Positions 11,619-27,708 of a stretch of DNA of 64,000 nt are shown here, in pieces. Source of the DNA: Oopsacas minuta. Its lineage: Eukaryota > Animalia > Porifera. The translations under genes and the position numbers were made by a program. The stretch is from assembly GCA_024704765.1 (NCBI GenBank), contig JAKMXF010000111.1, positions 574,619 through 638,618 of the forward strand. The letters are read 5' to 3'. The notes beneath the pieces were generated by a model. That model ran no database searches. It was not told where the DNA came from and saw only the letters and a list, made by a program, of their open reading frames with translations. Each line of letters starts with the position of its first letter. The first letter of the stretch is position 1.

Positions 11619-14600
11619 ATGAATATCCAACGTGTAATCGCCTCCCTGATGCTAAGCCTTATATTTATATTTTCAATTTTGCAAGAGATGCTTGCAAGTC
11701 ACATAGACCTTGCTGGGTACACACAAATTCCTTCTTCAACGAATATTATCGCTACATCTACAAGCTCTATAAGTGAGATATCGTGTTTCTCTCCACAGAA
11801 CCAAATCTATAGGAATATTCTACATGATCCAGTTAGTTAAAATTCCCAACAAATAACTAAACAATTACAATTCTGTTCTATCTATAGCCTCCGTCAGCTG
11901 TACTACGAGATAACGATTTTGTTATTTCTATAAGGATCAATCCTTCCTTGTCAGAACGAAGGTATTTCCAGAATTATTTGTTACAAAAATTACCAATTTT
12001 TATAAATATTTTCTTTTGCAGATATTTGTTGCTATACATCGATCAACCGAGTATGGAAGTATTCTTTAGCTTTTACGTTAATCCTGGGTCCTTTGAAGCA
12101 GGGATTACTTACAAGACATGCAGCGGGGAGACTAATACGATCCCTATCTTCAATTCAGGGATACGAATATTCACTGATATATTCCTAGCTATATCTGTAT
12201 CTATGGTTAACTCTACTCATCTTCTTATAACTTCATTAATAGGAGAAAACAATGAGGCTTCTGAAGAGGTTGTTAGTGGGTCTATGGAATGCTCATTCCC
12301 TCTGGACAAGAAATATATTGCAAACGCTATTCCCAGCACAGAAGGTATTCTTAGATTCCTTGGGCAGAGTATGAATCTTCTTTTGGTTGGAAAATCTCTT
12401 ACTTCAGAGGAATTAATATTGTTAAAGGAAAGAGGAGATCTGAATGGAGATATTACTTACTCAAATTCGGATTGTTTATGTCCTAAAGATTATGATATAT
12501 TAACCGAAGAGTGTTGCTATAACTCACAAAATAATATCACATCAATTAGGTTAGAATTATTTTATACTGTATGGACTATGGATTAGTTATACGCACATTT
12601 TATTTGTAGGATAACCTCAGATGATTACAACCCTGAATCAGCTATTGATGACAACCCGTGCACTTATTGGCAGTCCGCCTCAGATGAAGAGAACGTAAAC
12701 CTCTCCATCTCTCTCTTTCCTATTGTTCCTGAAATACAGCTGATAAGAATTCAGTTTGAATCTCCTCCTTCTAAGCTCACTCTAACAGTGAAATCATTAG
12801 AAAATATCTCTATTGTAGCCTATGTAGACGATAATTGTGATACTTATAGCTCAATTTACATATGTAAGAGGTTAGTATCTTATTCGTATATTAAGGAGTC
12901 ATACTTGGTATGCGTATTGACTCAATAAATAATCGTTATACAGTTAACACCGGTAACTCGAACCCTCGGGAAAATCTAAATCTGTTCGAGTAATTACCGG
13001 GCATTCTAGTTACGGATATTGACTGTATTTCTAAATAGGTATCTGGCTGATTTTGATGATATTCCTTGCTGTGTTACTACCAGTCAGCTGATCGATAATC
13101 CTCTATTAGAAATCCTGGTAAGAAATATTAATATTAATACAGGAATACAAATATTTATTTACTAAATTACAGTTCTCTAGCGTTACTCCCTTACAGAATA
13201 TATCTTCTGTCATCTTATCTCTTACAGAATTCTCTCCAAATTCTCGTTACTATTCTATTTCTAATTTTAACCTCTACGCTATATCTGAGGTGGATATTAT
13301 AAATATCAATTCTTCTACAATAAGTACTATGGGATATACTCAGACATATATACCAACCAAGAGTCCTATATCTTCACAAATGTTCACACCTTTTGTTTCT
13401 ATCCCTAAATCATATTTGACATTTCAAACATCTATTCCTGTTCATCCTACAAACTCTACAAGTATTACAAGAATGACTAGCAAGCAGACTAAAGTAATAT
13501 CAAAAACTAGTCAATTCATGACATCATCATATATCTATACTATTCCTTCTCCACAGACATCAATGTTTACATCTTTATTTACAGCTGTATCTTCTATCAT
13601 GCAATCTATATCTCCTTATTCATCTTCATTACATACTAGAATAACAGATACTCAAACAACCACCTTACATCAAACAGAATCCATTATTCCTACATCTACT
13701 AAACCCTTTTATAATTATAGTACATCTAGCTCTCTATTCTCTTCCTTGATGCAAACTTCTATTGGTGATAGTATGACGTCATCTCCTCTTATTTCATCTA
13801 CAAGTATACCTGCATCCACATCTACAGTTTTGCATACATCTTCGTCGACAACTATGCCTACTTATACAATATTATCTACTACATCTACTGTATCACCATC
13901 TACTACCCCTACAAGCATACCTACTACTTCTACTTCTACTTCTACAATATTATCTACTTCTACTTCTACTTCTACAATATTACCAACTTCTACTTCTACT
14001 TCTACAATATTATCTACTTCTACTTCTACTTCTACAATATTACCAACTTCTACTTCTACTTCTACAATATTACCAACTTCTACTTCTACTTCTACAATAT
14101 TACCAACTTCTACTTCTACTTCTACAATATTACCAACTTCTACTTCTACTTCTACAATATTACCAACTTCTACTTCTACTTCTACAATATTACCAACTTC
14201 TACTTCCACAGTATTACCTACATCTATGCCTACACCTCCCCCTACTCCTATTCTACCATGCACCAAGCCTATACCTACGTCACATATAGATATAACTGTA
14301 CCTGATAGTATTGGGTATAAGCAGTATCATTTCATTAATAATTCTATTGATGATAGCCAAATCTTAATTATACAAACTCGTATGGATAGTAACAACATTT
14401 CAGTAGATATACCCTTTGGTTTAACGAAGATATTACAGGTGACGTTTTCACTCCATCCTGTTTCAATACTGGATTACTTTATCCATTCTAGCACTATCTG
14501 GTATCAAGATAATTATCTACGAGTATCTATAACGGGATTAGATGAGTATAATACATTTAATGTGAGAGATACAAACATTAGTGTATCTCTTTTACACGAG

Positions 14601-17600
14601 GATATATTATTTTCTCAAAATATTATTCTATCAGGTTCTTATAATCATAAAATGATAATGTTCACGTTACCAGATGTCTGGTTTACTAATTCAACTCAAA
14701 TAATATCACCTTCCCTTCTGGCTACATCTGTATATACTGTCCTAATCAACACTACACTATCTCTATTGTTACCGAGACTTCCTCCTAGCTTACAGGTACC
14801 AACAGAACACCGCCCTGTCGTTATAATTACTCTCCCACAATACCCTCTCTCTGCAGGTGATACAGCTATATTACCTGTATATCTACTCGCTAATATAGGA
14901 GCTAGATACATAGCTATTGAGTTTAATTACCCTTTAAACTCATCTCTTATTAATCTCGATCCTTCATACAAATGGGAGTTCACTTATGACCTCAACAAGG
15001 TTGTTATCAGTGGATTTGTTGATGTCCCTCTAGGATATACAGCTGCTTATAAATTGTTTGATATAACTATTTTATTACTCAGCAGAGATAGTCAAGTATC
15101 TTGTCAATTGAAGCAGGTATTTGACACTACATACACATCACTCGTGACTACAGATTTACCTATTTGTTATTTCTCTGGACTCTATGGGGTAGTTGAATCA
15201 CCTGGTTACCTTAACATATCTGATGATAGTGCTATTAGCATATCTGCATACCCCCAATACTCAGTACTATACAATCATGCAGTGTTATCTCAATCTGTGA
15301 TAAATATCCCTGTATATACATATATCTATACTATCAATGGTGTTAGCACTGATTACAGTCTACTGAATTGTTATTCTAGCGATGTTTCTATAGCTAAGAT
15401 ATCTCAGGATTGTACTCATCTGTATGTAGATGGAAGCGAGCTAAAAGGATCGAATAACTTGACTATACATTTTGGTTATGAAGATTTGAATACTGAGTTC
15501 TATGTAAAAGTATTCTATCCAGATATTCCTATTACATTGAGGCTTACAGATCCGATATTGAATATTATACCGGTGTATCCTTACAGATACGATTGTACTT
15601 CTAAGTTCCAAACCAGCAAATTACTAGTTTATACAAACTTCTCTTCTTCTAATGAAATTACTCCAAATATAGATATCAGTCAGTATATTGGCAGCTCCCT
15701 ATATGTAAGCCATACAAATATAGCTGTATTAGATGATATGTATTTAGAAGGTATATCTGCTGGATATGGGAAGGTTTATGTGGAGATTAGTAATACGAAA
15801 ATTGGCTTTACAAATTTCGTTGTGTCGATGGAACCTGTTGAGCTGTCTTGCTATTCTCCTCGTATATACTCTGATAATATTGATTACAATACAAACACAC
15901 TATACACGAGTTTGTACCAGTCTATGAGCTTTGATTTGATACTGTCAAGGACTTTTCTATTCAATTCTACCATAGGATATTCTAGTGTAGTCCTACAGTT
16001 CTCTGATAGCAATACACAGCCTGTATCCTCCTACAATATCAATGCAACAAATAGTGTTAAATATACAAGTAACACATATACTCTCTTGGATAATTCTATG
16101 ATTACATTCAATCTTCCAAATAGCTGTCCCTCTCTCTCCTCTCTCCCTTTCATTACTCAAATAAATCTTAGTACTCCAGATGATTTCTACATATGCATTT
16201 CTTCACGAATACTAACAACAGAAGGTGATATTGCTTCTAGATTCGGCTATAACACATTTGCTGTATTGAGAATATTGTTAGTATATAATTCTCAATTAGT
16301 AGAAGCTACTGGTGCTGGGTTTATAGATATTAGCATAATAAATCCTAATATTATTAACCTGGTTATGTCAGATAATGGAGCAGTGCTGTATAGTCAAATA
16401 TCTTCTGGTCAAACCGAAGTTATGATTTCATTAACTCAACCTGCTTTAACCAAATCAGTTATGATACAAGTTGTATCTGCTACAGGAGTACAGAGCTCTC
16501 TATTCTCTCCTTCCTCTCTAAAGCCCATTTATACTCTCTCTAAATTAACAGCTGATACATTCCAAACTGGGTATTTTGAAGTTGAGTTAGTTCTCTATAA
16601 CTCTCTGACTATTCTTATCACAAATACTTCTGAACTACTTCTTGAGGTAAGAGAATTCTCTGAGTATATAGATACACAAGCCCCTATATCAGATAAAGCA
16701 TATTTCATAGACAATATACTGCATGTTAACGCTAGTGCTGTTACAAGAGATACTACGGTTGTATTATCAGCTGTCTATGACACGTTCACTACTAGTTTTG
16801 TAGTCTCTATTTCAACTAATATTTTGTTTATTTCTAATTTCTCAGAATTTGAATTTATTCCAAACTTGACAGGTGTCCTGGCTAGTCAGTTCTCTGTAGA
16901 CTTTGGTATAATACTCAGTGACGGGACCGAAATAGTGCGGTACTTTGATAACGGTCTCATATTCCCTGATCTCCGTTTTGAGGTATCGGATCCCACTTCA
17001 ATATTCTTCTCCCCCACAACAGGTCTAATAACATTAATCGGTAATTCTAAGGATATTGTATATCTTAAAGTAAGCAGTGATAACGTGTCTAGAATTTCTA
17101 ATGGATTTGCAGTCAACCTATCTCCGTCCGGAAATGGTATTGATCTAGGGAATGAAGACGGTTTAGCTCTCCCTCCTCAGCAAATAAATTCTACATTTAA
17201 AATTCCGATATGGTTACAAACAAGTTCAGATTACAAATCAATAGATATATCACTATCCTATGAAGCTAGTGTATTATCTCTAGTTAGAATATTACCAGAC
17301 TCCTCTTTTAACGGTGGAATATTCCTCTCTCAACACGAGACCCTAGGAGCTATAAGGCTAGGCGGTATATTACCTTTAGAAATAGCAAGAGATAGAATTC
17401 TTATCGCAGAGATCGAGATGTTAGCAATACAATCTAGAGACGCTAATATTCATGCTGAAGTTATCACACTATCTGGTCCATTTCCTCTCTATTCCAATCT
17501 CCTTAACTTTACTCACCCTGTGGTTACTAATCTAACCCAGGTAGTGTATTCTAAGAATAAATTAATTCCGAATATTCCATTCTCCACAAGTAGATTCCGT

Positions 17601-20600
17601 AATGAGAGGAGTGTAATCTGTTTAGAAAAGACTGTCACATCCTCTGGTAGAAATATTTGTATTAAATGTAGTATAGAAGTTATAGGAGATATTAATAGTG
17701 ATTGTAAGTTCAATCTTAATGATGTAGTTTACTTACTGGACTATGTAACAGCATCTTATACGGAGTTCAGCTCTGTTTCAGGACTTCTAATTAAGGAAGA
17801 GTTTGACTCTCTCCCTCTCCCACGGTCTGATATAAACCAAGATGGAGAGATCTCTATTACAGACGTGTACTATCTAATGTGGGTTAATTACGGACTATTC
17901 TACTTCTTAGAGTCTGTAGATACTTCTCTCGTCTTTCCTACAAACGCATTACCTTCTGTATACAACTGTGAATTATTTGTGAAAATTAACCTAGTTAACC
18001 CCCCTCTATCAAACAATCAATTCCACACATACATAGAGCTATCTCATTCTAATACAGTAAGGCTACTCAACATAACACAAGGTGATTATGTCTCCAATAT
18101 AAGTAGAGATGATATTTATAGTGATATTTATAAAGCATCTAGTTTTATAATAAGAAGAATTATACCATCAGTGTTCAGCGGACAGATTGGTATATCTCCT
18201 ATACTAATAGCTACAGATGGAGCTAATAATTTCCAGCAGATATTCATTGATAGATCTCCTCCCACACTAAACTACCCTGAGCTAAGAACTACTATTCCTT
18301 TCTTGTCCTCACAAGTATCTTTATACATACCGGAAGGGTACTCCCCCTACACAAGCTACACCCCCCCTCAGGTCTGTGGGGGACAGTTTGTATATCTTAG
18401 AGTTTTGGGAGAGATGCAGGCTAGCGAATTCACGATATACTGGCCTCAGACTGGAGGAATTGGTCCATTCTCTTTGAAGAGAGTATTTTGTTCTATGATA
18501 GGTCGTGAGACCAATAACATACACATCCCTTGTAACCGACAAATAACAACAAATACTGATATCATATTTCCAGAGTATAAAGTTACAGGTCTTAACCCGT
18601 ACTCTCTTTATCAATTCCAGATGGAAGTCAATGGTAGGACTTCTCAATGGACACAGTTCTTAACACCAGAAGCAGGTGAGTATACGTACACACAATTATA
18701 TTATTTATATATAACTAATTCTGTTAACAATCACTGTAATGTCTCATAAACTATAGCTATAGTATTTGAATACAGCCCATCGGCTTCTCACTCACACTGA
18801 TAATATTCCCTGATGCATTGATAGCGATACCAGCTGGTTTAAGGAAATTGATTGTTTCTCGATTTCCCAGTTTATAGAGTAGTTTCCCTTCTTGATTGAA
18901 TATACAAATCAGGTTACTGTCTTTATCGCTTATTAGCAGATTCCCATACACATCTATGGTGAAGAACCAACTGCACAGTACGTCTCTTTTCAGACCTTGA
19001 GTGATAAGATGTATTTTGATTCTGGATGTAATTTTATCGAACATTTGTATGCAAGGATCATTCTCATCTAATATGTACACAGTCTCAAGACAAACTTTAA
19101 TGTCCCTCGGCTGGTAGATAAGTCTGTCTGTAAATATCCCTTTAAACACGAGATTATGTGAGAATACTTGAATTCTATTATTCAGTCTATCACATACATA
19201 AAGCTCTTTCTTCCTCGAATCAAAATCCAGTCCTGTCGGGTCGATGAACTCTCCCTCCTTATTGCCATACCTTACTATCCCATCACAATATTTGCCTTGC
19301 ATATCAAACATTTTCACAGCTGCATGCTTACTACTTGTCCTACTCTCTGTCACATATATGTTGTTACCATGGCAACAGAGCCCCCACGGGCCATCCATGT
19401 TGTTAACTAGGCCCATCATCCCTGGATGCTGGAAACTGAACTTCAGTTTACCCCATTGGGTATACGCTGATACTCTATTATTGTTATAGTCTGCTACAAA
19501 GAAACTGTTATCTTGGCAGACGGCTACACCAGCTGGATTGCTCAGCTGATCGATCTCTGACCCCACTGAGTAACTCTCTACCTTAGGATACTTTATAGCT
19601 TTATAAGAACTAATGTCCTCATTCATAGCATTGCTATCCTCTTTATGTATTTCTTCCTTATCTTCTACCGGCTCGTCTTTGTCAAGTTTCTTGTTAACTT
19701 CTATATTGCCTAGTTTTGCTATTTTCCCTTCAAGCTGGCCATCCCATCTGAATCTCACGGTCTTCTCGTGATTAAGGTTCCCTAAGTAATCTATCTCTCT
19801 CTGTATCCCGGTAAGCACCCTTGTCTGTACCTCATTCAACCGATTATCGTTCCTAGACCCACTCTCATAGGTAGACATTACTGACCTCAACTTTGCGAGT
19901 TCGTTTCCCCGAACATCTTCAAGTTCAATATACTCCCTCTCCAAGTCATGAATCTCATCTTGCAGTTTAGATTTATGTGAATTGATAGATTGTATTAAAT
20001 TCTCGTATTTATCGTCTACTTGTGTTAAAGTAAACTTCAACAGATCCAGATAGTCCGAATTTCCCTGAAGAATTTCTTTTTCTGCCATTCTAGCAATTAT
20101 AAAGTATTTTGAAAGTAGTTTATGATATACCTATAAGTTTATTATGTTTGTCATATTAATTGCAAAATTAATCATAACTTAGCCTATTTACTGCTCTTAT
20201 ATACACATTTTATTTACAGCTCCTGTGTCTCTCCTCTCACCCTTACTCACAAGATACAACATAACCTGTACTCATCTCACTTGGGAGGAACCTGAAATAA
20301 CCAATGGTGTAATTACAAGTTATTCTCTAATTCTGAATAACACAATTAAACAAGAGTTTGATAACAAGACAAGAGCCTATCTACTGTGTGTAGCTGATAA
20401 GGACCATGAATATATTATCGTAATACAAGCTAACAACAGGTAAATATCAATAATTAATATTATTATTATTATTTATTACATTTAACAAATTTGATAAAAC
20501 AGGGAGAATAATTTTATTTTATTAAACCGCATTAATCGTGTACAACCAGGAGTTTATCAAAACCTACACTCCTGTCTCTGTTCAGTACACTGACTAACTC

Positions 20601-23600
20601 ATGGTTAAGAGATCTAAGAAATTCTGTAACACGATGTTCCTTCTCTCTCAACCTTAATATATCGTATATGTATTGAAGAGTATTCATTTTTGCTTCATCA
20701 AAGTCTGCCTCTGAATCTTGATATAAACTTAAATTACTAGCTTTGAAGTTCTGAGTATTCTCTTCAGGATTGTAGCAAATAGAACGTACTATCCTCCTGC
20801 TATGGACTATCCTGTAATACTTATTCAAGCTGAAACCATCAATATTCCCATCTCCCACTCTTTCCTGTGATAAGCTTAGTTGAGTTATGTCCCCTTGCTT
20901 AATCAGATCCTTAGAAATCTCTTTAGCTATTGGTTCCCATCCGTATTGTGCTCCTTTCCACTCCCTTGGTATTGTGTCTGCTCTTAATGCCATTAACGCA
21001 GTTATCAGCTCTTTGCCAGTAAAACTCTTACGCACGCAACTGAGCTTAACATCTAGAAATGATATTATTTCAGGACGTGAGAGCCCTGTATGTGCTGTCA
21101 GCGTATTTTCCATATCAAGAGATGGGTTCTCATTATCTAAACTTGTATTACTAAACTCTATCTGATAACCTCCACTGCATTCTCCCTTCAATACTTTGAA
21201 TAGTTTCAACAGTGCGACAGACTCCAGTAAATGGAAGTGCAGTAGATAGCTGAAGAACTCAGAAGTATCCATGAGCAGATGTGAATCTAATCCCCCTTGA
21301 TCTGGAGAGCATTTAAAGAAGTTTATCAGACACGATAATACATGTAGATAAAGTTCTGTAATCGCTCTGGCTCTCTGAGTTGAGTTAATACGTTTTAAAA
21401 TGATCTTAGCTTTATTCTCCAAGCCTCTAATAATGTTATACCATATCCTCTGTAGCGAATACCTGAATACATCTGGGTATAGATATCTACCAAGAAAATT
21501 CAGACAATCTCCTAAGTAATTCAGTGCTGGGGCTAGCCGCTGCTTCTCGTTAAATTCAGGAAGATTTAGTTCTATCAGGACAGAGAAGAATTGTAGGAAA
21601 CCACTGTTTATTTTATATGCTAGGACGTTTACTTCCAATTTCAGAGCTTTCTCTAGCTTAATCTGTGTTTGTGCAGCTGTATTTGCATCTATCTCATTCT
21701 CACTCTCATTTGAGAAAGAGTATATCTGATCCTCCCCCTCGCCAAGGGACCTGTTCCCTGTCAGAGGAGTCTGCATATCCGTGGTGCTTGTACTCCAGAA
21801 GTAAGCGCTTTGAGGAACAATATTCTGAGTACTCATTTTCTCGAGTAGCCGGGAGTTCAACTCCTCCCACATAGTAGTTATAACATAGAGGTTATTGATA
21901 CGTAGAGCCATTTCTTTTGATAGCTTTTCTATCGTCTGATCACCTGTATGTCTCTTCCCAGTAGCACACAAGTGTGAATAGTCACCTGACTGTATTGTAT
22001 GTCTACAGCCATATGTAAGTTTATCTCTAGTCAGCTGTTCCAACTGCTCTAACAAGTTATCTTTATCACCGTTCATTATTTCTAATGTTTCATCTCTACT
22101 CAATCCACAGTAATCCATGCAAATAAAGTTATAAGCAAATGTAAGGCAAATCTTACTGAGTGTATTGCTAGCTTCTGTGTAGAGTGTTTGTTTCATTTGA
22201 GCGTTGATTGTTCTCGTATAATCCACGAATTTCTTTACTTTCAGAACTTCTAGGGGTAGACCGGCATGAACTATATGTGATCTGTTCCTAATGAATTTTA
22301 AAGGAGATAGTGTTTGTAGGATGTTAATAATAAGAGAAGTGTAACGTGACAGCATAATAAGTACATCGATTAGACTGTTACTAACTGGTAGCTTTCTCCT
22401 GACGTTACCTAGCTGGTTAGAGTTCGGTATGGGACGGGGAATTGTTGTATTATTATTATTATTATTCACAGGAGTATATCCTCCTTCTTCTTGATCTGTA
22501 GAGCTCTCCCGCTTTGAGAATAAGGTCAAGTTTGATGAATTGTGCTTGGACTGTTTAGTGTCTGAGTTCTCACTAGTAGTTGTGTGTTGAGATTGTGAGC
22601 AATTACCTTCATTTATGTCGTAATCTAGAATATTGTTAAAATCACTAGAACTAGGACTCATGTATCTATCTCTCATGCTCGCTTCATCTTCTGTTGTGCT
22701 GGGGTTCGGAGAGAATCCTATTGTCTGATTTCCGTGGACGCTCTGTGGGATCATTGGACCATTGTCACTATCCTCTGAGAGCAAGCGGGGGTTCGGTTGT
22801 GGAAACAAACTTGAGAAAGCAGAATTTGGTGATTTAGCGAATTCTTGTTTCAAAGAGGATATTGGTGTAGCTTTATATTCATTAGTTATTGGATCAGCAA
22901 TTCTAGTTTCCCACTTATCACTCTTTATTATAGATTTGATGAAAAGTGTCATTTCGTTTTGTATTCCGACATTCCATTTCTCAATGAATAACCTCAGAAA
23001 CTCGTTTCTCCAGGCGATTGACTGTTCAGGAAGATAGCTAGTCCACAACACTGTATCATTGTGATCTAAATTAAACATCAATCCCATCATGTTCAGGTCC
23101 CTCTCTTCTGTCATTCTCAATTTCCCAGGCTCTATACTGAAGTTCCTACAGTGTCTCCTACACAGATATTCAATGTCTTGACAGATAAACTTGTAATATT
23201 CCGAGGTAACCAGTTGAGATACATTGAAATAGTTTCTCAGAGGTTCTTGATAATATTCTCTCATCCTCCTTATTTCCAGTGACACGACTGACAGCAGTTT
23301 ATTTACCATTACTGGATTGAGTGTATTGGCAGAACAATCCTCTGAGTTTTCAGGATTTTCCGTATTGTGATCTTTTGCTATTCGTAGCTTCTGATGGCCA
23401 TAAGTCTCTGCTACGAAGCTCTTGAACCATCTGGTTAGCATAGCTTCTACGGAGAGCATATTATTCTTTGACTTAGTTTGTATGTTAGTTAGATTCTGTA
23501 GAGTACCGTGTGTATCCATTACAAGCTCTAACAGTACTATAGCTCCGTTGAGTATACGCTTAATCGCTTTATGATTATTATGCACACAGTTAGCACTAGC

Positions 23601-26600
23601 TATCTTCTCAATCCCAATCGTTATCAGCCCCTGGATCTTCTTGCTCAGCTGATGGAGGGTTTGAAGGAAGATGTTCCTCTCCTGTTTGAGGAGGGTTGTG
23701 GTGGGACATTGGGGTCTGGCTGGTCTAGGATGAGCGCTTATGATGTCACCAAGTTGGTACAGTTTAGAGATTAACTTTGCTATTATCGACTCTATTATTC
23801 TGCAGTCCTGTATTGTTTGTATACAAAACTCTCTGCTGAGACAATCAAGGAAGGCTAGGTGTCTGTAGGTTTCTCCTACCCCGTAACGTAAGGCGTACTC
23901 CTCTAGCAACCGAGTTGTGGAAGGATGGAATGTTTGCTTGTCAGTCTGATTGTAATAACGTCTCAGCTGTTGAATACTATCAAAACTATCTGTAATATCG
24001 GTATTAGCATTCTCCCGCCGTGGGGTTAGATATCCCGTTAGACAATTACTTAGCTCATACTGTAATAAAATACTCAGTAATATACTGTAGCATTTGTGTA
24101 AGTCTCTAGGTAGAGGGACTCTTATAACAGGCTTACTGCGTGTATCAGCCTCTATCCTGTGGTAGAAACGGTGTATTAGAATATTAATTTCATTCTTCTC
24201 TTCTCTTAGCCAATACTCATACGCTGCTTTTGATGGAAATGCATTTTGTCTGTAATAAGGGTGCTGGCTCTTCTCCAGGACTTGGAAACGATGCAATAAC
24301 TCTCTGTAAAGAGTCTCAGATTTCCCTGTGTAGCTTTTCACGAAGAGTCCTGCTTTAGAACGAACTGATTTCCCAATCAAGTTAAAATCACCTATCACTA
24401 GTCCGAATGCTTGTCTCAAATGTGTCAGTAACATCTCTACAGTTTCTATGTGTTGAGACTCTGTAATGTGACTATTCGTGAATCTCCCGTTATGTTGCGA
24501 TACAGTACTCTCACTGGATACCTCATTCAGTGGAGGGAATGGTTTCTCCTTAACTCTACTATCTTCTGTCTGAATAGATAACGGTGATATTGTATTGGGA
24601 TGTGAGCATAATGAACTAGTGTCTATTGACTGGAATATTACACTATCATGATTCTGATTTGGGAGATCAACAACTGATAAGAACTGGAGCGTCTCTTGAT
24701 GCTGATGGGGATTGTTATTATCGTCCTCTTCTTGTTCCAACTCTGGGGGAGGGGGAGCTGAGAGGACAGGAAACTCCGCACACAAGTAAGCTAGCTCTAG
24801 AGATCTCTTCTCATCTTCACACAAATCTCCAAGTTGTCTGTTCCTTCCTAAATCCCAACGCACCTTCAGTCCGTCCATATGCGCAAACCTTGAAGACATG
24901 GGTTCTTCCAGCTGCTGTATGGGTCTGAGAAGAGAAGATGGATAGGTGAACCCTTTCGTAACCTTTGGGGGCGGAGAGGCAATACAGAGTTTTACACAAG
25001 CATTATTCTTTGTGAATCTTAGGAAGTATCTGTGTAAGAGAATCAGATTCTTAGAATGAGAAAGACAACTTCCAGCCTTGTTAGAAGTTAAATCTGGTAG
25101 CACGTGAGCATTTGGAGGGATAGGATTCTGAGATCTGGCGCTCTGGAACTTGTTCCAGGTCTCCAACTCCTCCCCCAATATCTCTTCTAATACTTGTTTA
25201 GTTATGACAAGGAGACATCCTGCTTGTTGTTCGGGAAGAAATTTCCATTTCAGTTTACCCTCTACCTTAATATAATGTGTAAGCAGAGACGTGCATGAGG
25301 TATACGATATATTGGATGTCTTTTCTGTATTCGATCTTAGTTTAGAGAAATTGTTATGAATGGAAGGGAATATATTAATTCCAGTCTCACTCAAGTTACT
25401 ACTATCAGTTGTCTTCCTTACCACAGTGAGGGGGTTTTCAGTCCTCGTAGGTTCCTCTGTCTCCCTCTGAACTATACTAATTTCATCTACTACATTAGTC
25501 GCCATGTATTTAAAATTTAATTGCTTGCATTTTATGAGAAAGACTATTATAGTTTAGTTTCAGGATAACCTCCTTTTCAGAATATAAAATGAGTTCAAAT
25601 TTCACTGTCATTCGATCTAATCAATGACTAATATATTCAAAATTATGGAGTATAAAGTTCTATTAGCTAATCATAGTGCTGTACCCAAAAATATGTGTCG
25701 TGTTTAGTTGGCAACTAAGTGTAATTGTAAATCTTCTCAATTACTCAATTAACCTTCTATTCAGTACGTATTAATACTTTGATTTATAGCGCTGGAAGTG
25801 CTAAGAGTAATGCAGTGCTCTCAAATTCAAGTAAGTTGAATCCATTTTCTACGATTTAGACTAGGAACCGTTGTTATATCTTTGTGTATTTAGTTGGAGA
25901 TGCTACGGTGATTAATAGTCGGATAAGCTCCAGTTGTGTGGAGCTAAGCTGGACTCATCTTATCTTCAATTTATCTTCTATCGCTTCTGAAACGTTTATT
26001 ATATCTATTGACAACACTACTATAGCTACAGAGCATAACGGTACTCTTATTCTGGTATGTAACCTCATTACAGATGGTATCCCTTTCTATCTGGAAGTAA
26101 CAAGTTCTAGGTAATTCGTCAGGGAATAATTAGCAATATTTGATTTTAATTAATTTGTATTATAGAGTTGGTAAAATATTCTCCGGCAGTATAACAATTC
26201 CTCTCTCCATTTCATTCCCCTACTACATACTCCTAGCAGTCCTACTCCCTGCCCTTGTTGCCTTCCTACTCCTATTATGCTGTATTGCTATTGTTATATG
26301 CTGCTGGAAATCTAACAGATATGCAATATTCAAAGTACAAAAAGATAGCAATAAAGGAAGAAACTACTGGTCTAAAGAGGAAGAGTTTGTTGTTAGTCAA
26401 ATTTATTTATTCAATATCAGAATTTTATATAATTAATCCTGTTAGGAGGTTTCGCCAGTAGACATCCAACCGATGGAAGAAAGGTTATTTGTTCCTCAAC
26501 AGAATAGAGACAGGAGCGGGACATTTGATTCATCAGCTGATTCGTGGATGGATAGAGGACGGGTAAGCTAGCACATACCCTGTGTGTGTTATTGATTTTA

Positions 26601-27708
26601 TTCATATGCTAATTAGTTGCAGGATGTAGAGCAGGGAGTAACACGTAATCACAATAGAGACAATTCATTCGACAGCACTTCTTTCATCTTATCTGAGGCA
26701 CCAGATGACTCTATGTATTGTAACACTATCAATACTACAATGGCTTCAGATGACAGATCTATTTCACCTAGGAAATATTCCTCACTGAGAGGTAGGCCTC
26801 GCTTCCTGCCTCCAGGCTCAGATCTGAGGAAAGCTAAAAAGAGTCATTCCTGGCATAATCTGAGACATAAGCGTTTTAGGAGGTCAGCTAGTAAGCTGAA
26901 TGATACAGACAAGAGATCTTCTGAACTCTACAAGAATAATAATAAAGATGAGTCTACACAGAATATAGGAGAGAGCATTACTACTGTGACAGATTCATCT
27001 ATTGAGATGTATGATAATCCTAGCACAGATATACAACCAGTAGAGAGTCCTCCTATAGCATTAATCGCTGTATCTACTGAGTTATATCAGGGCAATGAAC
27101 CTGATAATGTTATTGAACCTGAATACAGAAGTACATCTATATCAAACTCATCTACTGATATAAGCAGAGATTCTACTGAGGATATTATACTTGATCCATC
27201 AGAGCCTGTCTCTAAACCCATTGTATCACACACCCCAGCTTCTGGTCCCATACAGGACAATACTCTCCCTACATTCTCAGAGATATATGACAACAGAGTA
27301 GCTACATACGATTTGGATGAACCAATTACTCCAATTGATATTTCAATAGAAGAGGCTACTATTGCTACTTTTCTGCCTAAAAATAACAAGCATGTGACTC
27401 GACCCTCTCTCGACCTCTCAGCTGGTCACGTAATGGGTATGACTATAGCATACGAAATAGGGGACCTACCCCTTGAGGAGAACAAACCACGCCCCATACG
27501 TCATGACCGCTCATTCACTAGCCTCCCCCTTGAAGAAAATGTACCCTCCCGTAGAAGTATATTCCAGATTCCTGGAGAAGAACCACTTAACCTCTCCTAC
27601 GATATGGAACCGGATCAGTCAATTATTCTTATGGGACCACCTGAACCAAGCAACCAAGTGACCTCTCAACCAACTGAGGACACAATTGATACACAAAATA
27701 CAGAGTAA
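11619..27708 (+). CDS. Giant type-I membrane adhesion protein: signal peptide, LamG-like and laminin-N (usherin-like), Thr/Ser mucin stalk, TMEM132-like cohesin/BIG region, second cohesin, dockerin, FN3 repeats, TM, long cytoplasmic tail
   Basis: Signal MNIQRVIASLMLSLIFIFSIL. Exon near 12611-12870 NPESAIDDNPCTYWQS...IQLIRIQFESPP (LamNT). TMEM132-like CYSSDVSIAKISQDCTHLYVDGSELKG and LRLTDPILN...CTSKFQ. Dockerin at 17685-17890. Phase-compatible downstream exons 20220-20439 (FN3), 25790-25830 (NSAGSAKS), about 25893-26110 (FN3), TM exon YYILLAVLLPALVAFLLLLCC, tail to TAA 27708. Confidence 0.8.
12941..13025. mobile_element. 85-bp pogo/Tigger-like MITE in a receptor intron
   Basis: TA|CAGTTAACACCGGTAAC...GTTACGGATATTGACTG|TA; imperfect 17-bp TIRs with TA flanks. 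Confidence 0.7.
13926..14195 (+). repeat. Coding minisatellite, 9 x 30 nt (TSTSTSTIL[P/S])
   Basis: Nine near-identical ACTTCTACTTCTACTTCTACAATATTA(CCA/TCT) units plus a partial unit to about 14220; no spacers. Confidence 0.95.
18757..20088 (-). CDS. Coiled-coil + NHL-repeat beta-propeller protein, nested antisense in receptor intron 18676-20219
   Basis: N-terminal coiled coil, then NHL repeats LSNPAGVAV..FFVADYNNNRV, GPWGLC..IYVTE, GEFIDPTGL..LYVCDRLNNRIQVF, FLKPAGIAI. No RING or B-box. Confidence 0.88.
   Translation of the reverse strand: MAEKEILQGNSDYLDLLKFTLTQVDDKYENLIQSINSHKSKLQDEIHDLEREYIELEDVRGNELAKLRSVMSTYESGSRNDNRLNEVQTRVLTGIQREIDYLGNLNHEKTVRFRWDGQLEGKIAKLGNIEVNKKLDKDEPVEDKEEIHKEDSNAMNEDISSYKAIKYPKVESYSVGSEIDQLSNPAGVAVCQDNSFFVADYNNNRVSAYTQWGKLKFSFQHPGMMGLVNNMDGPWGLCCHGNNIYVTESRTSSKHAAVKMFDMQGKYCDGIVRYGNKEGEFIDPTGLDFDSRKKELYVCDRLNNRIQVFSHNLVFKGIFTDRLIYQPRDIKVCLETVYILDENDPCIQMFDKITSRIKIHLITQGLKRDVLCSWFFTIDVYGNLLISDKDSNLICIFNQEGKLLYKLGNRETINFLKPAGIAINASGNIISVSEKPMGCIQIL
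20532..25505 (-). CDS. MUN-domain (Munc13-homology) protein with a DEP-like C-terminus, intronless, nested antisense in receptor intron 20440-25789
   Basis: MHD2-like RLAPALNYLGDCLNFLGRYLYPDVFRYSLQRIWYNIIRGLE; MHD1-like FIEKWNVGIQNEMTLFIKSIIKSDKWE; LLEEYALRYGVGETYRHLAFL; DEP-like FTGKELITALM...ISKDLIKQGDI. No C2 domain recognised. Confidence 0.65.
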   Translation of the reverse strand: MATNVVDEISIVQRETEEPTRTENPLTVVRKTTDSSNLSETGINIFPSIHNNFSKLRSNTEKTSNISYTSCTSLLTHYIKVEGKLKWKFLPEQQAGCLLVITKQVLEEILGEELETWNKFQSARSQNPIPPNAHVLPDLTSNKAGSCLSHSKNLILLHRYFLRFTKNNACVKLCIASPPPKVTKGFTYPSSLLRPIQQLEEPMSSRFAHMDGLKVRWDLGRNRQLGDLCEDEKRSLELAYLCAEFPVLSAPPPPELEQEEDDNNNPHQHQETLQFLSVVDLPNQNHDSVIFQSIDTSSLCSHPNTISPLSIQTEDSRVKEKPFPPLNEVSSESTVSQHNGRFTNSHITESQHIETVEMLLTHLRQAFGLVIGDFNLIGKSVRSKAGLFVKSYTGKSETLYRELLHRFQVLEKSQHPYYRQNAFPSKAAYEYWLREEKNEINILIHRFYHRIEADTRSKPVIRVPLPRDLHKCYSILLSILLQYELSNCLTGYLTPRRENANTDITDSFDSIQQLRRYYNQTDKQTFHPSTTRLLEEYALRYGVGETYRHLAFLDCLSREFCIQTIQDCRIIESIIAKLISKLYQLGDIISAHPRPARPQCPTTTLLKQERNIFLQTLHQLSKKIQGLITIGIEKIASANCVHNNHKAIKRILNGAIVLLELVMDTHGTLQNLTNIQTKSKNNMLSVEAMLTRWFKSFVAETYGHQKLRIAKDHNTENPENSEDCSANTLNPVMVNKLLSVVSLEIRRMREYYQEPLRNYFNVSQLVTSEYYKFICQDIEYLCRRHCRNFSIEPGKLRMTEERDLNMMGLMFNLDHNDTVLWTSYLPEQSIAWRNEFLRLFIEKWNVGIQNEMTLFIKSIIKSDKWETRIADPITNEYKATPISSLKQEFAKSPNSAFSSLFPQPNPRLLSEDSDNGPMIPQSVHGNQTIGFSPNPSTTEDEASMRDRYMSPSSSDFNNILDYDINEGNCSQSQHTTTSENSDTKQSKHNSSNLTLFSKRESSTDQEEGGYTPVNNNNNNTTIPRPIPNSNQLGNVRRKLPVSNSLIDVLIMLSRYTSLIINILQTLSPLKFIRNRSHIVHAGLPLEVLKVKKFVDYTRTINAQMKQTLYTEASNTLSKICLTFAYNFICMDYCGLSRDETLEIMNGDKDNLLEQLEQLTRDKLTYGCRHTIQSGDYSHLCATGKRHTGDQTIEKLSKEMALRINNLYVITTMWEELNSRLLEKMSTQNIVPQSAYFWSTSTTDMQTPLTGNRSLGEGEDQIYSFSNESENEIDANTAAQTQIKLEKALKLEVNVLAYKINSGFLQFFSVLIELNLPEFNEKQRLAPALNYLGDCLNFLGRYLYPDVFRYSLQRIWYNIIRGLENKAKIILKRINSTQRARAITELYLHVLSCLINFFKCSPDQGGLDSHLLMDTSEFFSYLLHFHLLESVALLKLFKVLKGECSGGYQIEFSNTSLDNENPSLDMENTLTAHTGLSRPEIISFLDVKLSCVRKSFTGKELITALMALRADTIPREWKGAQYGWEPIAKEISKDLIKQGDITQLSLSQERVGDGNIDGFSLNKYYRIVHSRRIVRSICYNPEENTQNFKASNLSLYQDSEADFDEAKMNTLQYIYDILRLREKEHRVTEFLRSLNHELVSVLNRDRSVGFDKLLVVHD

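What the first reader, a model, noticed from the sequence alone, without database searches (positions are those of the whole stretch)
17136..17890. Cellulosome-type cohesin and dockerin side by side in an animal surface receptor
Seen: a cohesin-like beta-sandwich (GIDLGNEDG...FKIPIW...SIDISLSYEASVL...GAIRLGG) is followed by a duplicated Ca-binding dockerin motif (GDINSDCKFNLNDVVYLLDYV ... SDINQDGEISITDVYYLM) in the ectodomain. An earlier cohesin-like domain lies at about 14815-15125. Known: cohesin-dockerin is the high-affinity plug-and-socket of bacterial cellulosomes, and TMEM132 proteins carry a cohesin but are not known to carry a dockerin. Inference: one membrane protein with both partners could self-assemble in cis or trans as a Ca-dependent adhesion or scaffolding system.
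Basis: partly seen in the sequence, partly recalled or inferred. Interest (0 to 1): 0.88.

Follow-up and report, generated by a model that had tools for sequence, protein, structure and literature searches.

The report
Cohesin-dockerin clasp in a sponge receptor
A glass-sponge membrane protein carries a true bacterial-type cohesin and dockerin side by side, joined by a loop with a protease cut site; the same cassette occurs in hundreds of sponge and choanoflagellate adhesion proteins and probably works as a calcium-dependent clasp holding the cut protein together.

Summary
Window 17100-17912 (+), inside a 5.4-kb exon of an Oopsacas minuta gene (NCBI name 'Lefftyrin'), encodes three parts. The first is a cohesin: the AlphaFold model has pLDDT 88.6 and its best PDB matches are all cohesins. 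The second is a flexible loop with an R-N-E-R|S site. The third is a disulfide hairpin plus a dockerin, whose separate model has pLDDT 93.4 and whose first 37 PDB matches are all dockerins, not EF-hands. Both DxNxDxxx(N/S)xxD calcium loops are intact.

The upstream domain at 14814-15125 is a TMEM132-type cohesin (hhalign 96%, E 2e-9). RNA contigs splice the exon to FN3 exons and a transmembrane exon, so this is a membrane protein.

The cassette is not unique. A profile finds 295 representative proteins, in three sponge classes and in Salpingoeca rosetta. Of 245 dockerins, 235 follow a cohesin directly. The loop carries R-x-K/R-R in 57 of 74 members.

My reading is one intramolecular clasp across a convertase cut, not free cis/trans self-assembly. 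Domain identities are shown; cleavage and binding are inferred. The scan had already noted this cassette in three other genes of this genome. The cohesin in these families is published; I found no paper on the dockerin, but two key papers were not readable.

The parts
13290..18675 (+). Large coding exon (1,795 codons plus 1 base) of the Oopsacas minuta gene annotated 'Lefftyrin'. The true donor is at 18675|GTGAGT. The NCBI model reads on into the intron as far as the stop at 18749.
   Evidence: ORF. 100% match to P0001. An RNA contig of run X3 joins the exon end to 20220 (loose end at 20217). Sequence of the donor.
13926..14206 (+). Mucin-like stalk. It has 9.4 copies of a 30-bp repeat (TSTSTSTILP) inside a stretch that is 64% Ser/Thr/Pro (13311-14261).
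14739..15218 (+). TMEM132-type cohesin-like domain with no dockerin beside it. The aligned core is about 14826-15131.
   Evidence: hhalign of A5 against A6: probability 96.3%, E 2e-9. 10 of 35 relatives hit PF23039. Iterative HMM search.
15249..15785 (+). TMEM132 Ig domains: the 4th at 15249-15524 and the 5th (weak) at 15591-15785.
   Evidence: Pfam Ig_TMEM132_4th E 2.2e-15; 5th E 0.006.
17100..17555 (+). Cohesin domain, a beta-sandwich (ORF residues 1271-1422).
   Evidence: AF2 pLDDT about 90. Foldseek top matches are all cohesins, with TM by target up to 0.81. The family profile finds only cohesins in the PDB. Pfam Cohesin in 61 of 74 members.
17556..17618 (+). Flexible Coh-Doc linker. It holds the minimal convertase site R-N-E-R|S at 17598-17609. 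The first basic site of the family is degenerate here (N-K-L).
   Evidence: pLDDT 63-65. Family columns: P4 is R in 63 of 74, P2 is K/R in 59 of 74, P1 is R in 71 of 74. RX[KR]R density is 31 times the background. R167 and R170 are invariant in 7 hexactinellid orthologues.
17619..17681 (+). Cysteine-rich beta-hairpin in front of the dockerin. Conserved Cys lie at model positions 174, 187 and 190, and a fourth Cys sits inside calcium loop 1 (position 202).
17682..17912 (+). Dockerin. It has calcium loop 1 (17688-17723), helix 1, a linker helix, calcium loop 2 (17829-17864) and helix 3.
   Evidence: Pfam Dockerin_1 22.7 bits. Family profile against PDB dockerins E 1e-8. AF2 pLDDT 93.4 and the first 37 fold matches are all dockerins. 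Loop positions 1 and 12 are Asp in 73-74 of 74 members.
18757..20088 (-). Antisense NHL-repeat gene nested in intron 1 (18676-20219). It is not part of the receptor.
   Evidence: The same arrangement is seen in locus L001.
20220..20439 (+). FN3 exon.
   Evidence: Acceptor and donor sequence. The RNA loose end at 20217 carries the end of exon 1. Pfam fn3 E 0.007. In frame.
25790..25830 (+). 41-nt mini-exon that completes the FN3 G strand.
   Evidence: RNA joint 25830 to 25894, GT..AG, in run X3. Sequence. In frame. The junction from 20439 to 25790 was not seen directly.
25894..26110 (+). Membrane-proximal exon (FN3-like).
   Evidence: RNA joints 25830 to 25894 and 26110 to 26166. In frame.
26166..26400 (+). 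Exon with the transmembrane helix (26221-26307) and the start of the cytoplasmic tail. The 3' end of this exon was not determined.
   Evidence: RNA joint into 26166. Translation.

Best explanation
Window 17100-17912 encodes one conserved cassette: cohesin, exposed basic loop, disulfide hairpin, dockerin. It sits in the membrane-proximal ectodomain of a single-pass TMEM132-like sponge surface protein.

Shown here:
- Both domains are true homologues of prokaryotic cohesin and dockerin.
- The calcium ligands are intact.
- The dockerin almost never occurs without a cohesin directly before it.
- The loop carries a proprotein-convertase consensus that is conserved across the family.
- The gene is spliced to FN3 and transmembrane exons.

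Inferred:
- The dockerin binds its own neighbouring cohesin in the same chain, in a calcium-dependent way.
- A furin-type convertase cuts the loop in the secretory pathway. In most relatives it would cut at two sites and release a spacer.
- The outer part (mucin stalk, TMEM132 cassette, cohesin) then stays attached to the membrane stub (dockerin, FN3s, TM helix, tail) only through the cohesin-dockerin clasp.
- The Oopsacas cohesin side has no cysteine, so no disulfide would bridge the cut.

Such a joint could bear load and could let go on calcium loss or high force. In this it would resemble the furin-cut, calcium-stabilised Notch heterodimer, or SEA and GAIN domains.
For: Domain identity.

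Calcium loops: positions 1, 3, 5, 9 and 12 are conserved. Asp at positions 1 and 12 is found in 73-74 of 74 members.

Fixed arrangement of the pair: the two-domain AF2 model has pTM 0.84 and pLDDT above 90 in both domains. Two independently tumbling domains of 150 and 100 residues should not reach that value (the last step is my inference).

Obligate pairing: 235 of 245 dockerins lie within 120 residues after a cohesin. Giant cadherins carry 2-4 complete pairs.

Cut site: P4 is R in 63 of 74, P2 is K/R in 59 of 74, P1 is R in 71 of 74, and P1' is a small residue. A second basic site sits right after the cohesin. RX[KR]R density is 31 times that of the whole proteins. The loop has low pLDDT. 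All four conserved Cys lie on the dockerin side.

Membrane anchoring: RNA joints and an in-frame splice product with a TM helix.
Against: - No cleavage or binding was measured.
- The model's coordinates and PAE were not available, so I could not check whether the predicted contact uses the canonical cohesin face.
- The Oopsacas site is only the minimal R-x-x-R, with Glu at P2, and its first basic site is lost. This particular protein may therefore be cut poorly or not at all.
- Prokaryotic proteins with the same tandem pair exist without any convertase, so the pair has a function independent of cleavage.
- AFDB models of those prokaryotic tandems superpose on this model only with high rmsd.
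Confidence: 0.5

Rival explanations
1. Intermolecular assembly. The dockerin binds a cohesin of another molecule or another part of the protein. That could be the upstream TMEM132-type cohesin at 14739-15218, or cohesins of the giant cadherins. Binding would be in trans between cells or in cis on one membrane, and would build a calcium-dependent adhesion or scaffold network.
For: The protein has a second cohesin-like domain with no dockerin beside it. Cohesin hits without a following dockerin are common in the family, 44, and many of them are of the TMEM132 type. Bacterial cohesin-dockerin pairs work between chains (established knowledge). Other genes of this genome carry the cassette too.
Against: Dockerins are almost never free of an adjacent cohesin (235 of 245). 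That 1:1 arrangement is not what a plug-and-socket network needs. AF2 places the dockerin confidently relative to its neighbour (pTM 0.84). The conserved convertase loop has no role in this model.
Confidence: 0.2
2. Uncut structural module. The cohesin and dockerin pack together as one rigid, calcium-stabilised spacer of the stalk, as in the prokaryotic tandem proteins. The basic motifs would not be processing sites; they might bind glycosaminoglycans or be a quirk of composition.
For: The same tandem exists in bacteria and archaea, which lack furin. The Oopsacas site is weak (R-N-E-R) and its first site is lost.
Against: The position-specific conservation of P4, P2 and P1 Arg with a small P1' residue in 57-71 of 74 members matches the convertase consensus closely. 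The motif lies in the one low-confidence loop of the module. Hexactinellid orthologues keep P4 and P1 Arg invariant.
Confidence: 0.22
3. Not a dockerin at all, but an ordinary EF-hand pair next to an Ig-like sandwich that resembles cellulosome modules by chance.
For: Pfam scores for the Oopsacas sequence alone fall below the curated cut-offs: Dockerin_1 22.7 against 22.9, and no Cohesin hit.
Against: The family profiles hit dockerins and cohesins first and with significant E-values. The fold matches are exclusively those folds. Position 12 of both loops is Asp as in dockerins, not Glu as in EF-hands. Only 1 of 74 members hits EF-hand_7.
Confidence: 0.03

Closest known systems
Non-cellulosomal tandem cohesin-dockerin proteins of bacteria and archaea (for example the Archaeoglobus fulgidus cohesin, PDB 2xdh)
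   Same: The order is the same, a cohesin directly followed by a dockerin in one chain, and the folds and calcium-loop pattern are the same. These are the nearest clusters by language-model features and by AFDB fold search over both domains. 2xdh is the best PDB sequence hit for the cohesin profile. From memory, not readable here: Peer et al. 2009 noted that both modules can occur in one protein.
   Different: The prokaryotic proteins are small or enzyme-linked. They have no convertase loop, no disulfide hairpin, no Cys in calcium loop 1 and no TMEM132, cadherin or FN3 context. The dockerin linker here is about 12 residues longer than the Pfam model.
Cellulosomal type I cohesin-dockerin pairs (for example C. 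thermocellum 1ohz, 4fl4, 4dh2)
   Same: The fold matches (TM by target 0.65-0.82 for the dockerin, up to about 0.7 for the cohesin). The calcium loops are duplicated.
   Different: There the partners are on different proteins, a scaffoldin and an enzyme. The dockerin repeats are near-symmetrical and carry Ser-Thr recognition pairs. Here the two repeats differ, the partners are in one chain, and no scaffoldin or enzyme is involved.
TMEM132 family and the premetazoan lefftyrin, coherin and hedgling proteins (Sanchez-Pulido and Ponting 2017, PMC6030884; Nichols et al. 2012, not readable here)
   Same: The TMEM132 cohesin-like and Ig 4th/5th domains are present. The protein is single-pass with a cytoplasmic tail. 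PF00963 cohesins were already reported in choanoflagellate and sponge proteins.
   Different: Vertebrate TMEM132 has no PF00963 cohesin and no dockerin. The paper states that dockerin homologues are not detectable in vertebrates and leaves the partner open. This protein has no cadherin repeat and adds a mucin stalk, the Coh-Doc cassette and FN3s.
Furin-cut, non-covalently held surface receptors (Notch S1 heterodimer, FAT cadherins; by analogy SEA and GAIN domains)
   Same: By inference only: a convertase consensus lies in an exposed ectodomain loop flanked by domains that could hold the halves together with calcium.
   Different: The holding domains are unrelated, and cleavage is not shown here. 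This comparison rests on established knowledge of those receptors, not on a tool result.

Membership tests
Cohesin (Pfam PF00963) | Flattened beta-sandwich (jelly-roll) fold that superposes on solved cohesins | tested here: met
   AF2 pLDDT 88.6. All top Foldseek PDB matches are cohesins, with E down to 3e-8 and TM by target up to 0.81.
Cohesin (Pfam PF00963) | Sequence-profile membership | tested here: met
   The Oopsacas sequence alone gets no hit. Its orthologue P0004 scores 25.8 against a GA of 24.1. 61 of 74 homologues hit at E <= 0.01, the best at 3.7e-13. The family profile finds only cohesins in the PDB.
Cohesin (Pfam PF00963) | Binds a dockerin | not testable with these tools
   Only indirect evidence: pTM 0.84 for the two-domain model and obligate adjacency.
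Dockerin type I (Pfam PF00404) | Two 12-residue calcium loops with ligands at positions 1, 3, 5, 9 and 12 (Asp at 12), each followed by a helix | tested here: met
   Both loops are intact in Oopsacas. Family conservation. Helices follow each loop.
Dockerin type I (Pfam PF00404) | Dockerin fold rather than a generic EF-hand | tested here: met
   The first 37 PDB fold matches are all dockerins. The profile hits dockerins at E 1e-8 and calmodulin at 0.003-0.03.
Dockerin type I (Pfam PF00404) | Pfam gathering score | tested here: inconclusive
   22.7 bits against a cut-off of 22.9 for the isolated segment, and 15.4-19.1 in longer contexts. 40 of 74 relatives hit at E <= 0.01, the best at 2.3e-7.
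Dockerin type I (Pfam PF00404) | Near-symmetrical duplicated 22-residue segments with a short linker (dual binding mode) | tested here: not met
   The loops start 47 residues apart, so the match needs a gap of about 12 residues against the Pfam model. The two repeats have different conserved signatures.
Cellulosome system | A scaffoldin with several cohesins that recruits dockerin-bearing enzymes | tested here: not met
   No enzyme domain and no scaffoldin. The context is mucin, TMEM132, FN3 and a TM helix.
TMEM132 family | Cohesin-like 3rd domain followed by Ig 4th, 5th and 6th domains, then a single TM helix and a tail | tested here: met
   4th domain E 2e-15 and 5th weak. 3rd domain by hhalign and via relatives. 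TM exon joined by RNA. The 6th domain was not detected in Oopsacas.
TMEM132 family | Overall architecture as in vertebrate TMEM132 (nothing between the Ig domains and the TM helix) | tested here: not met
   About 1,100 further residues follow, including Coh-Doc and FN3s, and there is an N-terminal mucin stalk.
Lefftyrin / cadherin superfamily (the NCBI name of P0001) | Cadherin repeats | tested here: not met
   No PF00028 hit at E <= 1 in the 1,819-residue ORF or in the first 420 residues of P0001. Relatives with the same cassette do carry cadherins.
Convertase-processed receptors | R-x-K/R-R in an exposed loop | tested here: inconclusive
   Oopsacas has only R-N-E-R|S. The strict motif is present in 57 of 74 relatives. 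The loop pLDDT is 63-65. Cleavage itself cannot be tested with these tools.

The most novel reading that the evidence does not exclude
The Coh-(convertase loop)-Doc cassette is a pre-animal, calcium-dependent, non-covalent mechanical joint. It was inherited from a prokaryotic tandem module and built into holozoan adhesion receptors, both TMEM132-like proteins and giant cadherins. After furin cutting, these receptors would be chains of pieces held only by cohesin-dockerin clasps. That would give them a force- or calcium-gated release point. It would also supply the missing dockerin partner for the animal cohesin question raised in 2017.
Probability: 0.4. Interest if true: 0.85.

Novelty: new variant of a known kind. 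Interest (0 to 1): 0.68.

Why it matters
Cohesin-dockerin is one of the strongest non-covalent protein pairs known, and it has been treated as a microbial device. Cohesins were noticed in choanoflagellate and sponge cadherins and in TMEM132. The partner was left open because no dockerin is detectable in vertebrates (PMC6030884).

Here a genuine dockerin sits right behind the cohesin, as a conserved cassette with a convertase loop. It occurs in sponges of at least three classes and in Salpingoeca rosetta. This turns a vague 'adhesion domain' annotation into a concrete, testable mechanism: a calcium-dependent clasp across a proteolytic cut, in the adhesion toolkit that predates animals.

The dockerin mostly scores under Pfam's cut-off, which may explain why standard annotation lists only the cohesin.

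Tried and rejected
- Pfam on the Oopsacas segment alone gave no cohesin hit and a sub-threshold dockerin.
- A PDB profile search with only the 7 close orthologues was weak (E 0.16). It became significant only with the 74-sequence family alignment.
- One Pfam call failed because of an out-of-frame reference.
- Nichols et al. 2012 and Peer et al. 2009 are not held. I therefore could not check whether eukaryotic dockerins next to these cohesins were already listed there.
- Three literature searches for dockerin together with sponge, choanoflagellate, cadherin or metazoan terms found only PMC6030884.
- Taxon look-ups were mostly blank. Of 30 cluster look-ups and three homologue searches, only Oopsacas, Corticium candelabrum, Sycon ciliatum and Salpingoeca rosetta came with names. 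The range in cnidarians and bilaterians is therefore unknown.
- My first guess for the acceptor after the FN3 exon (25865) was wrong. The RNA contigs show a 41-nt mini-exon (25790-25830) and an acceptor at 25894.
- The model's coordinates and PAE are not exposed, so the Coh-Doc interface could not be inspected.
- I considered covariation analysis but dropped it. About 235 pairs are too few, and there is no structure to validate against.


Full report
**Where we are.** The finding lies in one uninterrupted ORF, 13290-18749 (+), of 1,819 codons. The ORF is 100% identical to the C-terminal 1,819 residues of an NCBI protein of the glass sponge Oopsacas minuta named 'Lefftyrin' (P0001, 2,220 aa). 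Six orthologues at 51-65% identity come from ENA assemblies. One of them lies on a sponge-metagenome contig with the same gene neighbourhood.

**The observation.**
- GIDLGNEDG starts at 17136.
- The two calcium loops lie at 17688-17723 (D-I-N-S-D-C-K-F-N-L-N-D) and 17829-17864 (D-I-N-Q-D-G-E-I-S-I-T-D).
- The upstream domain begins at 14814.

On the Oopsacas sequence alone, Pfam gives Ig_TMEM132_4th (E 2e-15), a weak 5th Ig, and Dockerin_1 at 22.7 bits against a cut-off of 22.9. It gives no Cohesin hit. Taken alone, that is suggestive but not proof.

**Bringing in relatives.** Among the orthologues, P0004 passes the Pfam Cohesin gathering score at the homologous position, and four others hit weakly. 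I aligned the cohesin-plus-dockerin stretch of the seven orthologues (A2) and used the profile to read all 1.84 billion representative proteins.
- It found 295 proteins at E <= 0.001 and 117 at E <= 1e-10.
- In most, the match covers the whole 277-position profile, that is both domains together.
- Many are proteins of 4,000-8,000 residues.
- Pfam on samples shows cadherin repeats, TMEM132 Ig domains and solid Cohesin hits (up to 65 bits) at the homologous site.
- Of 74 aligned members (A3), 61 hit Pfam Cohesin (best 3.7e-13), 40 hit Dockerin_1 (best 2.3e-7) and only one hits EF-hand_7.

**Folds.** AlphaFold2 on the Oopsacas segment with A3 gave mean pLDDT 88.6 and pTM 0.84. It shows a beta-sandwich, a low-confidence loop (pLDDT 63-65 at residues 150-170), a beta-hairpin, and three main helices with a short helical turn.
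- Foldseek against the PDB returns cohesins almost exclusively. E reaches 3e-8 and TM by target reaches 0.81.
- A separate model of the hairpin plus dockerin (A4) has pLDDT 93.4. Its first 37 PDB matches are all dockerins, with TM by target 0.65-0.82. EF-hand proteins appear only far below.

Sequence profiles against PDB chains agree.
- The dockerin profile hits about 25 dockerins first. The best are 4dh2_B at 1.1e-8 and 4fl4_A at 1.3e-8, the latter over both repeats. Calmodulins come at 0.003-0.03.
- The cohesin profile hits only cohesins, the best being the Archaeoglobus fulgidus cohesin 2xdh at 1e-7.

Calcium ligands at loop positions 1, 3, 5, 9 and 12 are conserved. Asp at positions 1 and 12 is found in 73-74 of 74 sequences, and position 12 is Asp as in dockerins, not Glu as in EF-hands.

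**The upstream domain.** An iterative HMM search within the session's proteins links ORF residues 484-643 to a repeated module of the family. 10 of 35 members hit Pfam PF23039 'TMEM132 cohesin-like domain'. Profile-profile comparison with the true cohesin gives probability 96.3% and E 2e-9 over 106 columns. The protein therefore has two cohesin-fold domains and one dockerin.

**Anatomy of the cassette.** Across the 74 members the cohesin ends in a strand (consensus F-V-A-G-x-V). After it come:
- a first basic patch, with K/R in 42, 67 and 59 of 74 at three consecutive columns;
- a spacer of variable length;
- a second site with Arg at P4 in 63, K/R at P2 in 59 and Arg at P1 in 71 of 74, followed by a small residue.

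This is the textbook proprotein-convertase consensus. The strict R-x-K/R-R motif occurs in 57 of 74 linkers, at 31 times its density in the whole proteins. 25-40 linkers hold two separate sites.

Directly after the second site comes a hairpin with conserved cysteines. A fourth conserved Cys sits at position 6 of calcium loop 1 (68 of 74). All four conserved Cys are on the dockerin side.

The Oopsacas protein has R-N-E-R|S at 17598-17609. P4 and P1 Arg are invariant in the seven hexactinellid orthologues. Its first site is degenerate, and it has no cysteine at all on the cohesin side.

**Pairing.** Of these, 235 start within 120 residues after a cohesin. Most of the rest lie at the cut N-terminus of fragments. 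Giant cadherins hold two to four complete pairs 1,500-2,800 residues apart. In seven of seven proteins checked, the pair lies 617-728 residues after an Ig_TMEM132_4th domain. The unit of evolution is therefore a TMEM132 cassette followed by Coh-Doc.

**Mechanism.**
- Shown: the domain identities, the intact calcium sites, the obligate 1:1 adjacency, the conserved convertase consensus in the one flexible loop, and the high pTM of the two-domain model.
- Inferred: the dockerin binds its own neighbouring cohesin; a furin-type enzyme cuts the loop (in most relatives at both ends of the spacer); the two halves then stay together only through the calcium-dependent clasp.

I put this at about 0.5. 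Three rivals remain.
- An uncut rigid spacer, as in prokaryotes, which have the same tandem but no furin (0.22).
- A chance EF-hand (0.03).

Points that weigh against the clasp in this particular gene: the site is weak (Glu at P2), the first site is lost, and I could not inspect the predicted interface because coordinates are not exposed.

**Is it a surface receptor?** Yes, as far as the 3' half goes. Contigs of run X3 behave as RNA.
- One carries the end of the big exon fused to 20220.
- Others show the joints 25830 to 25894 and 26110 to 26166, both GT..AG.

Together with the sequence this gives exons 13290-18675, 20220-20439 (FN3), 25790-25830, 25894-26110 and 26166 onwards. All are in frame, and the product runs into a 29-residue transmembrane helix at 26221-26307. 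The NCBI model misses the donor at 18675 and ends in the intron. The junction from 20439 to 25790 was not seen directly, although its phase fits. The signal peptide and 5' end were not examined. No cadherin repeat and no phosphatase domain were found. The name 'Lefftyrin' is therefore a similarity label, not a tested membership.

**Distribution and what is known.** Named members are Oopsacas (Hexactinellida), Corticium candelabrum (Homoscleromorpha), Sycon ciliatum (Calcarea) and the choanoflagellate Salpingoeca rosetta PTSG_03507. The cassette therefore predates animals. Most hits carry no taxon label, so its range elsewhere is open.

Sanchez-Pulido and Ponting (PMC6030884) describe the TMEM132 cohesin. 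They note PF00963 cohesins in choanoflagellate and sponge proteins, and they say the TMEM132 cassette is shared by lefftyrins, coherins and hedglings. They leave the partner open because dockerins are not detectable in vertebrates. They do not mention a dockerin in the premetazoan proteins, in the main text or in the supplement legends.

Three full-text searches found no other paper. Peer et al. 2009 and Nichols et al. 2012 could not be read. From memory, Peer et al. state that cohesin and dockerin can occur in one protein and exist in 'primitive eukaryotes', so prior listing of some of these dockerins cannot be excluded.

The nearest relatives by language-model features and by AFDB fold search are small or C-terminal tandem Coh-Doc modules of bacteria and archaea.

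**Earlier notes of this scan.** The same cassette had been noted in three other genes of this genome. One note describes 'three cohesin - furin site - dockerin cassettes' in a cadherin, and its follow-up reached the same clasp reading. I saw those notes after my own alignment and counts. They agree with this report but are not independent evidence.

**Verdict.** I class it as a new variant of a known kind, with interest 0.68.

Noticed in passing
window 18675-18749: The NCBI protein model (P0001) reads through a canonical donor (G|GTGAGT at 18675/18676) into the intron and stops there. RNA contigs show that the transcript continues into FN3 and transmembrane exons. The public model therefore lacks the membrane anchor and the tail.
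   Followed up: yes
window 18757-20088 (-) and 20532-25505 (-); L001:9346-15351: Two antisense genes sit in consecutive introns of the receptor gene: a 443-aa NHL-repeat protein and a 1,657-aa protein. The same order (receptor exon, NHL gene on the other strand, a short FN3 ORF, a long antisense gene) is kept on a contig from a sponge metagenome that encodes the 64%-identical orthologue P0004.
   Followed up: partly
window 25790-25830: A 41-nt mini-exon completes an FN3 G strand. It is supported by an RNA joint (25830 to 25894). An ORF-based reading would miss it.
   Followed up: yes
window 13926-14206: A near-perfect 30-bp tandem repeat (9.4 copies, 97% matches) encodes TSTSTSTILP. It lies inside a 317-residue stretch that is 64% Ser/Thr/Pro, a mucin-like stalk that probably varies in length between individuals.
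   Followed up: partly
window 26617-27705 (+), putative cytoplasmic tail: There are two WIRS-like motifs (L-P-T-F-S-E and I-A-T-F-L-P) against 0.43 expected in shuffles, and no RVxF motif. TMEM132 tails are reported to carry a WIRS motif (PMC6030884). The exons after 26400 are not verified by RNA, and the motif is short.
   Followed up: partly
proteins P0008-P0031: Giant cadherins of 5,000-8,000 residues carry two to four complete Coh-Doc cassettes about 1,500-2,800 residues apart. Each follows a TMEM132-type Ig block by about 620-730 residues. If all are cut, these proteins would be chains of several clasped pieces.
   Followed up: partly
window 17619-17705: Four conserved cysteines lie on the dockerin side only. 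They form a hairpin (C-x(n)-C-x-x-C) plus a Cys at position 6 of calcium loop 1, where bacterial dockerins have Gly. This is probably a eukaryotic disulfide brace tying the hairpin to the first calcium loop.
   Followed up: partly
P0078 (Salpingoeca rosetta PTSG_03507), residues 1250-2258: A choanoflagellate protein without cadherin repeats (it has TNFR-Cys and Golvesin_C domains) carries the same TMEM132 Ig block followed by Coh-Doc with an R-R-M-R-R site. Here calcium loop 1 has Gly instead of the Cys.
   Followed up: partly
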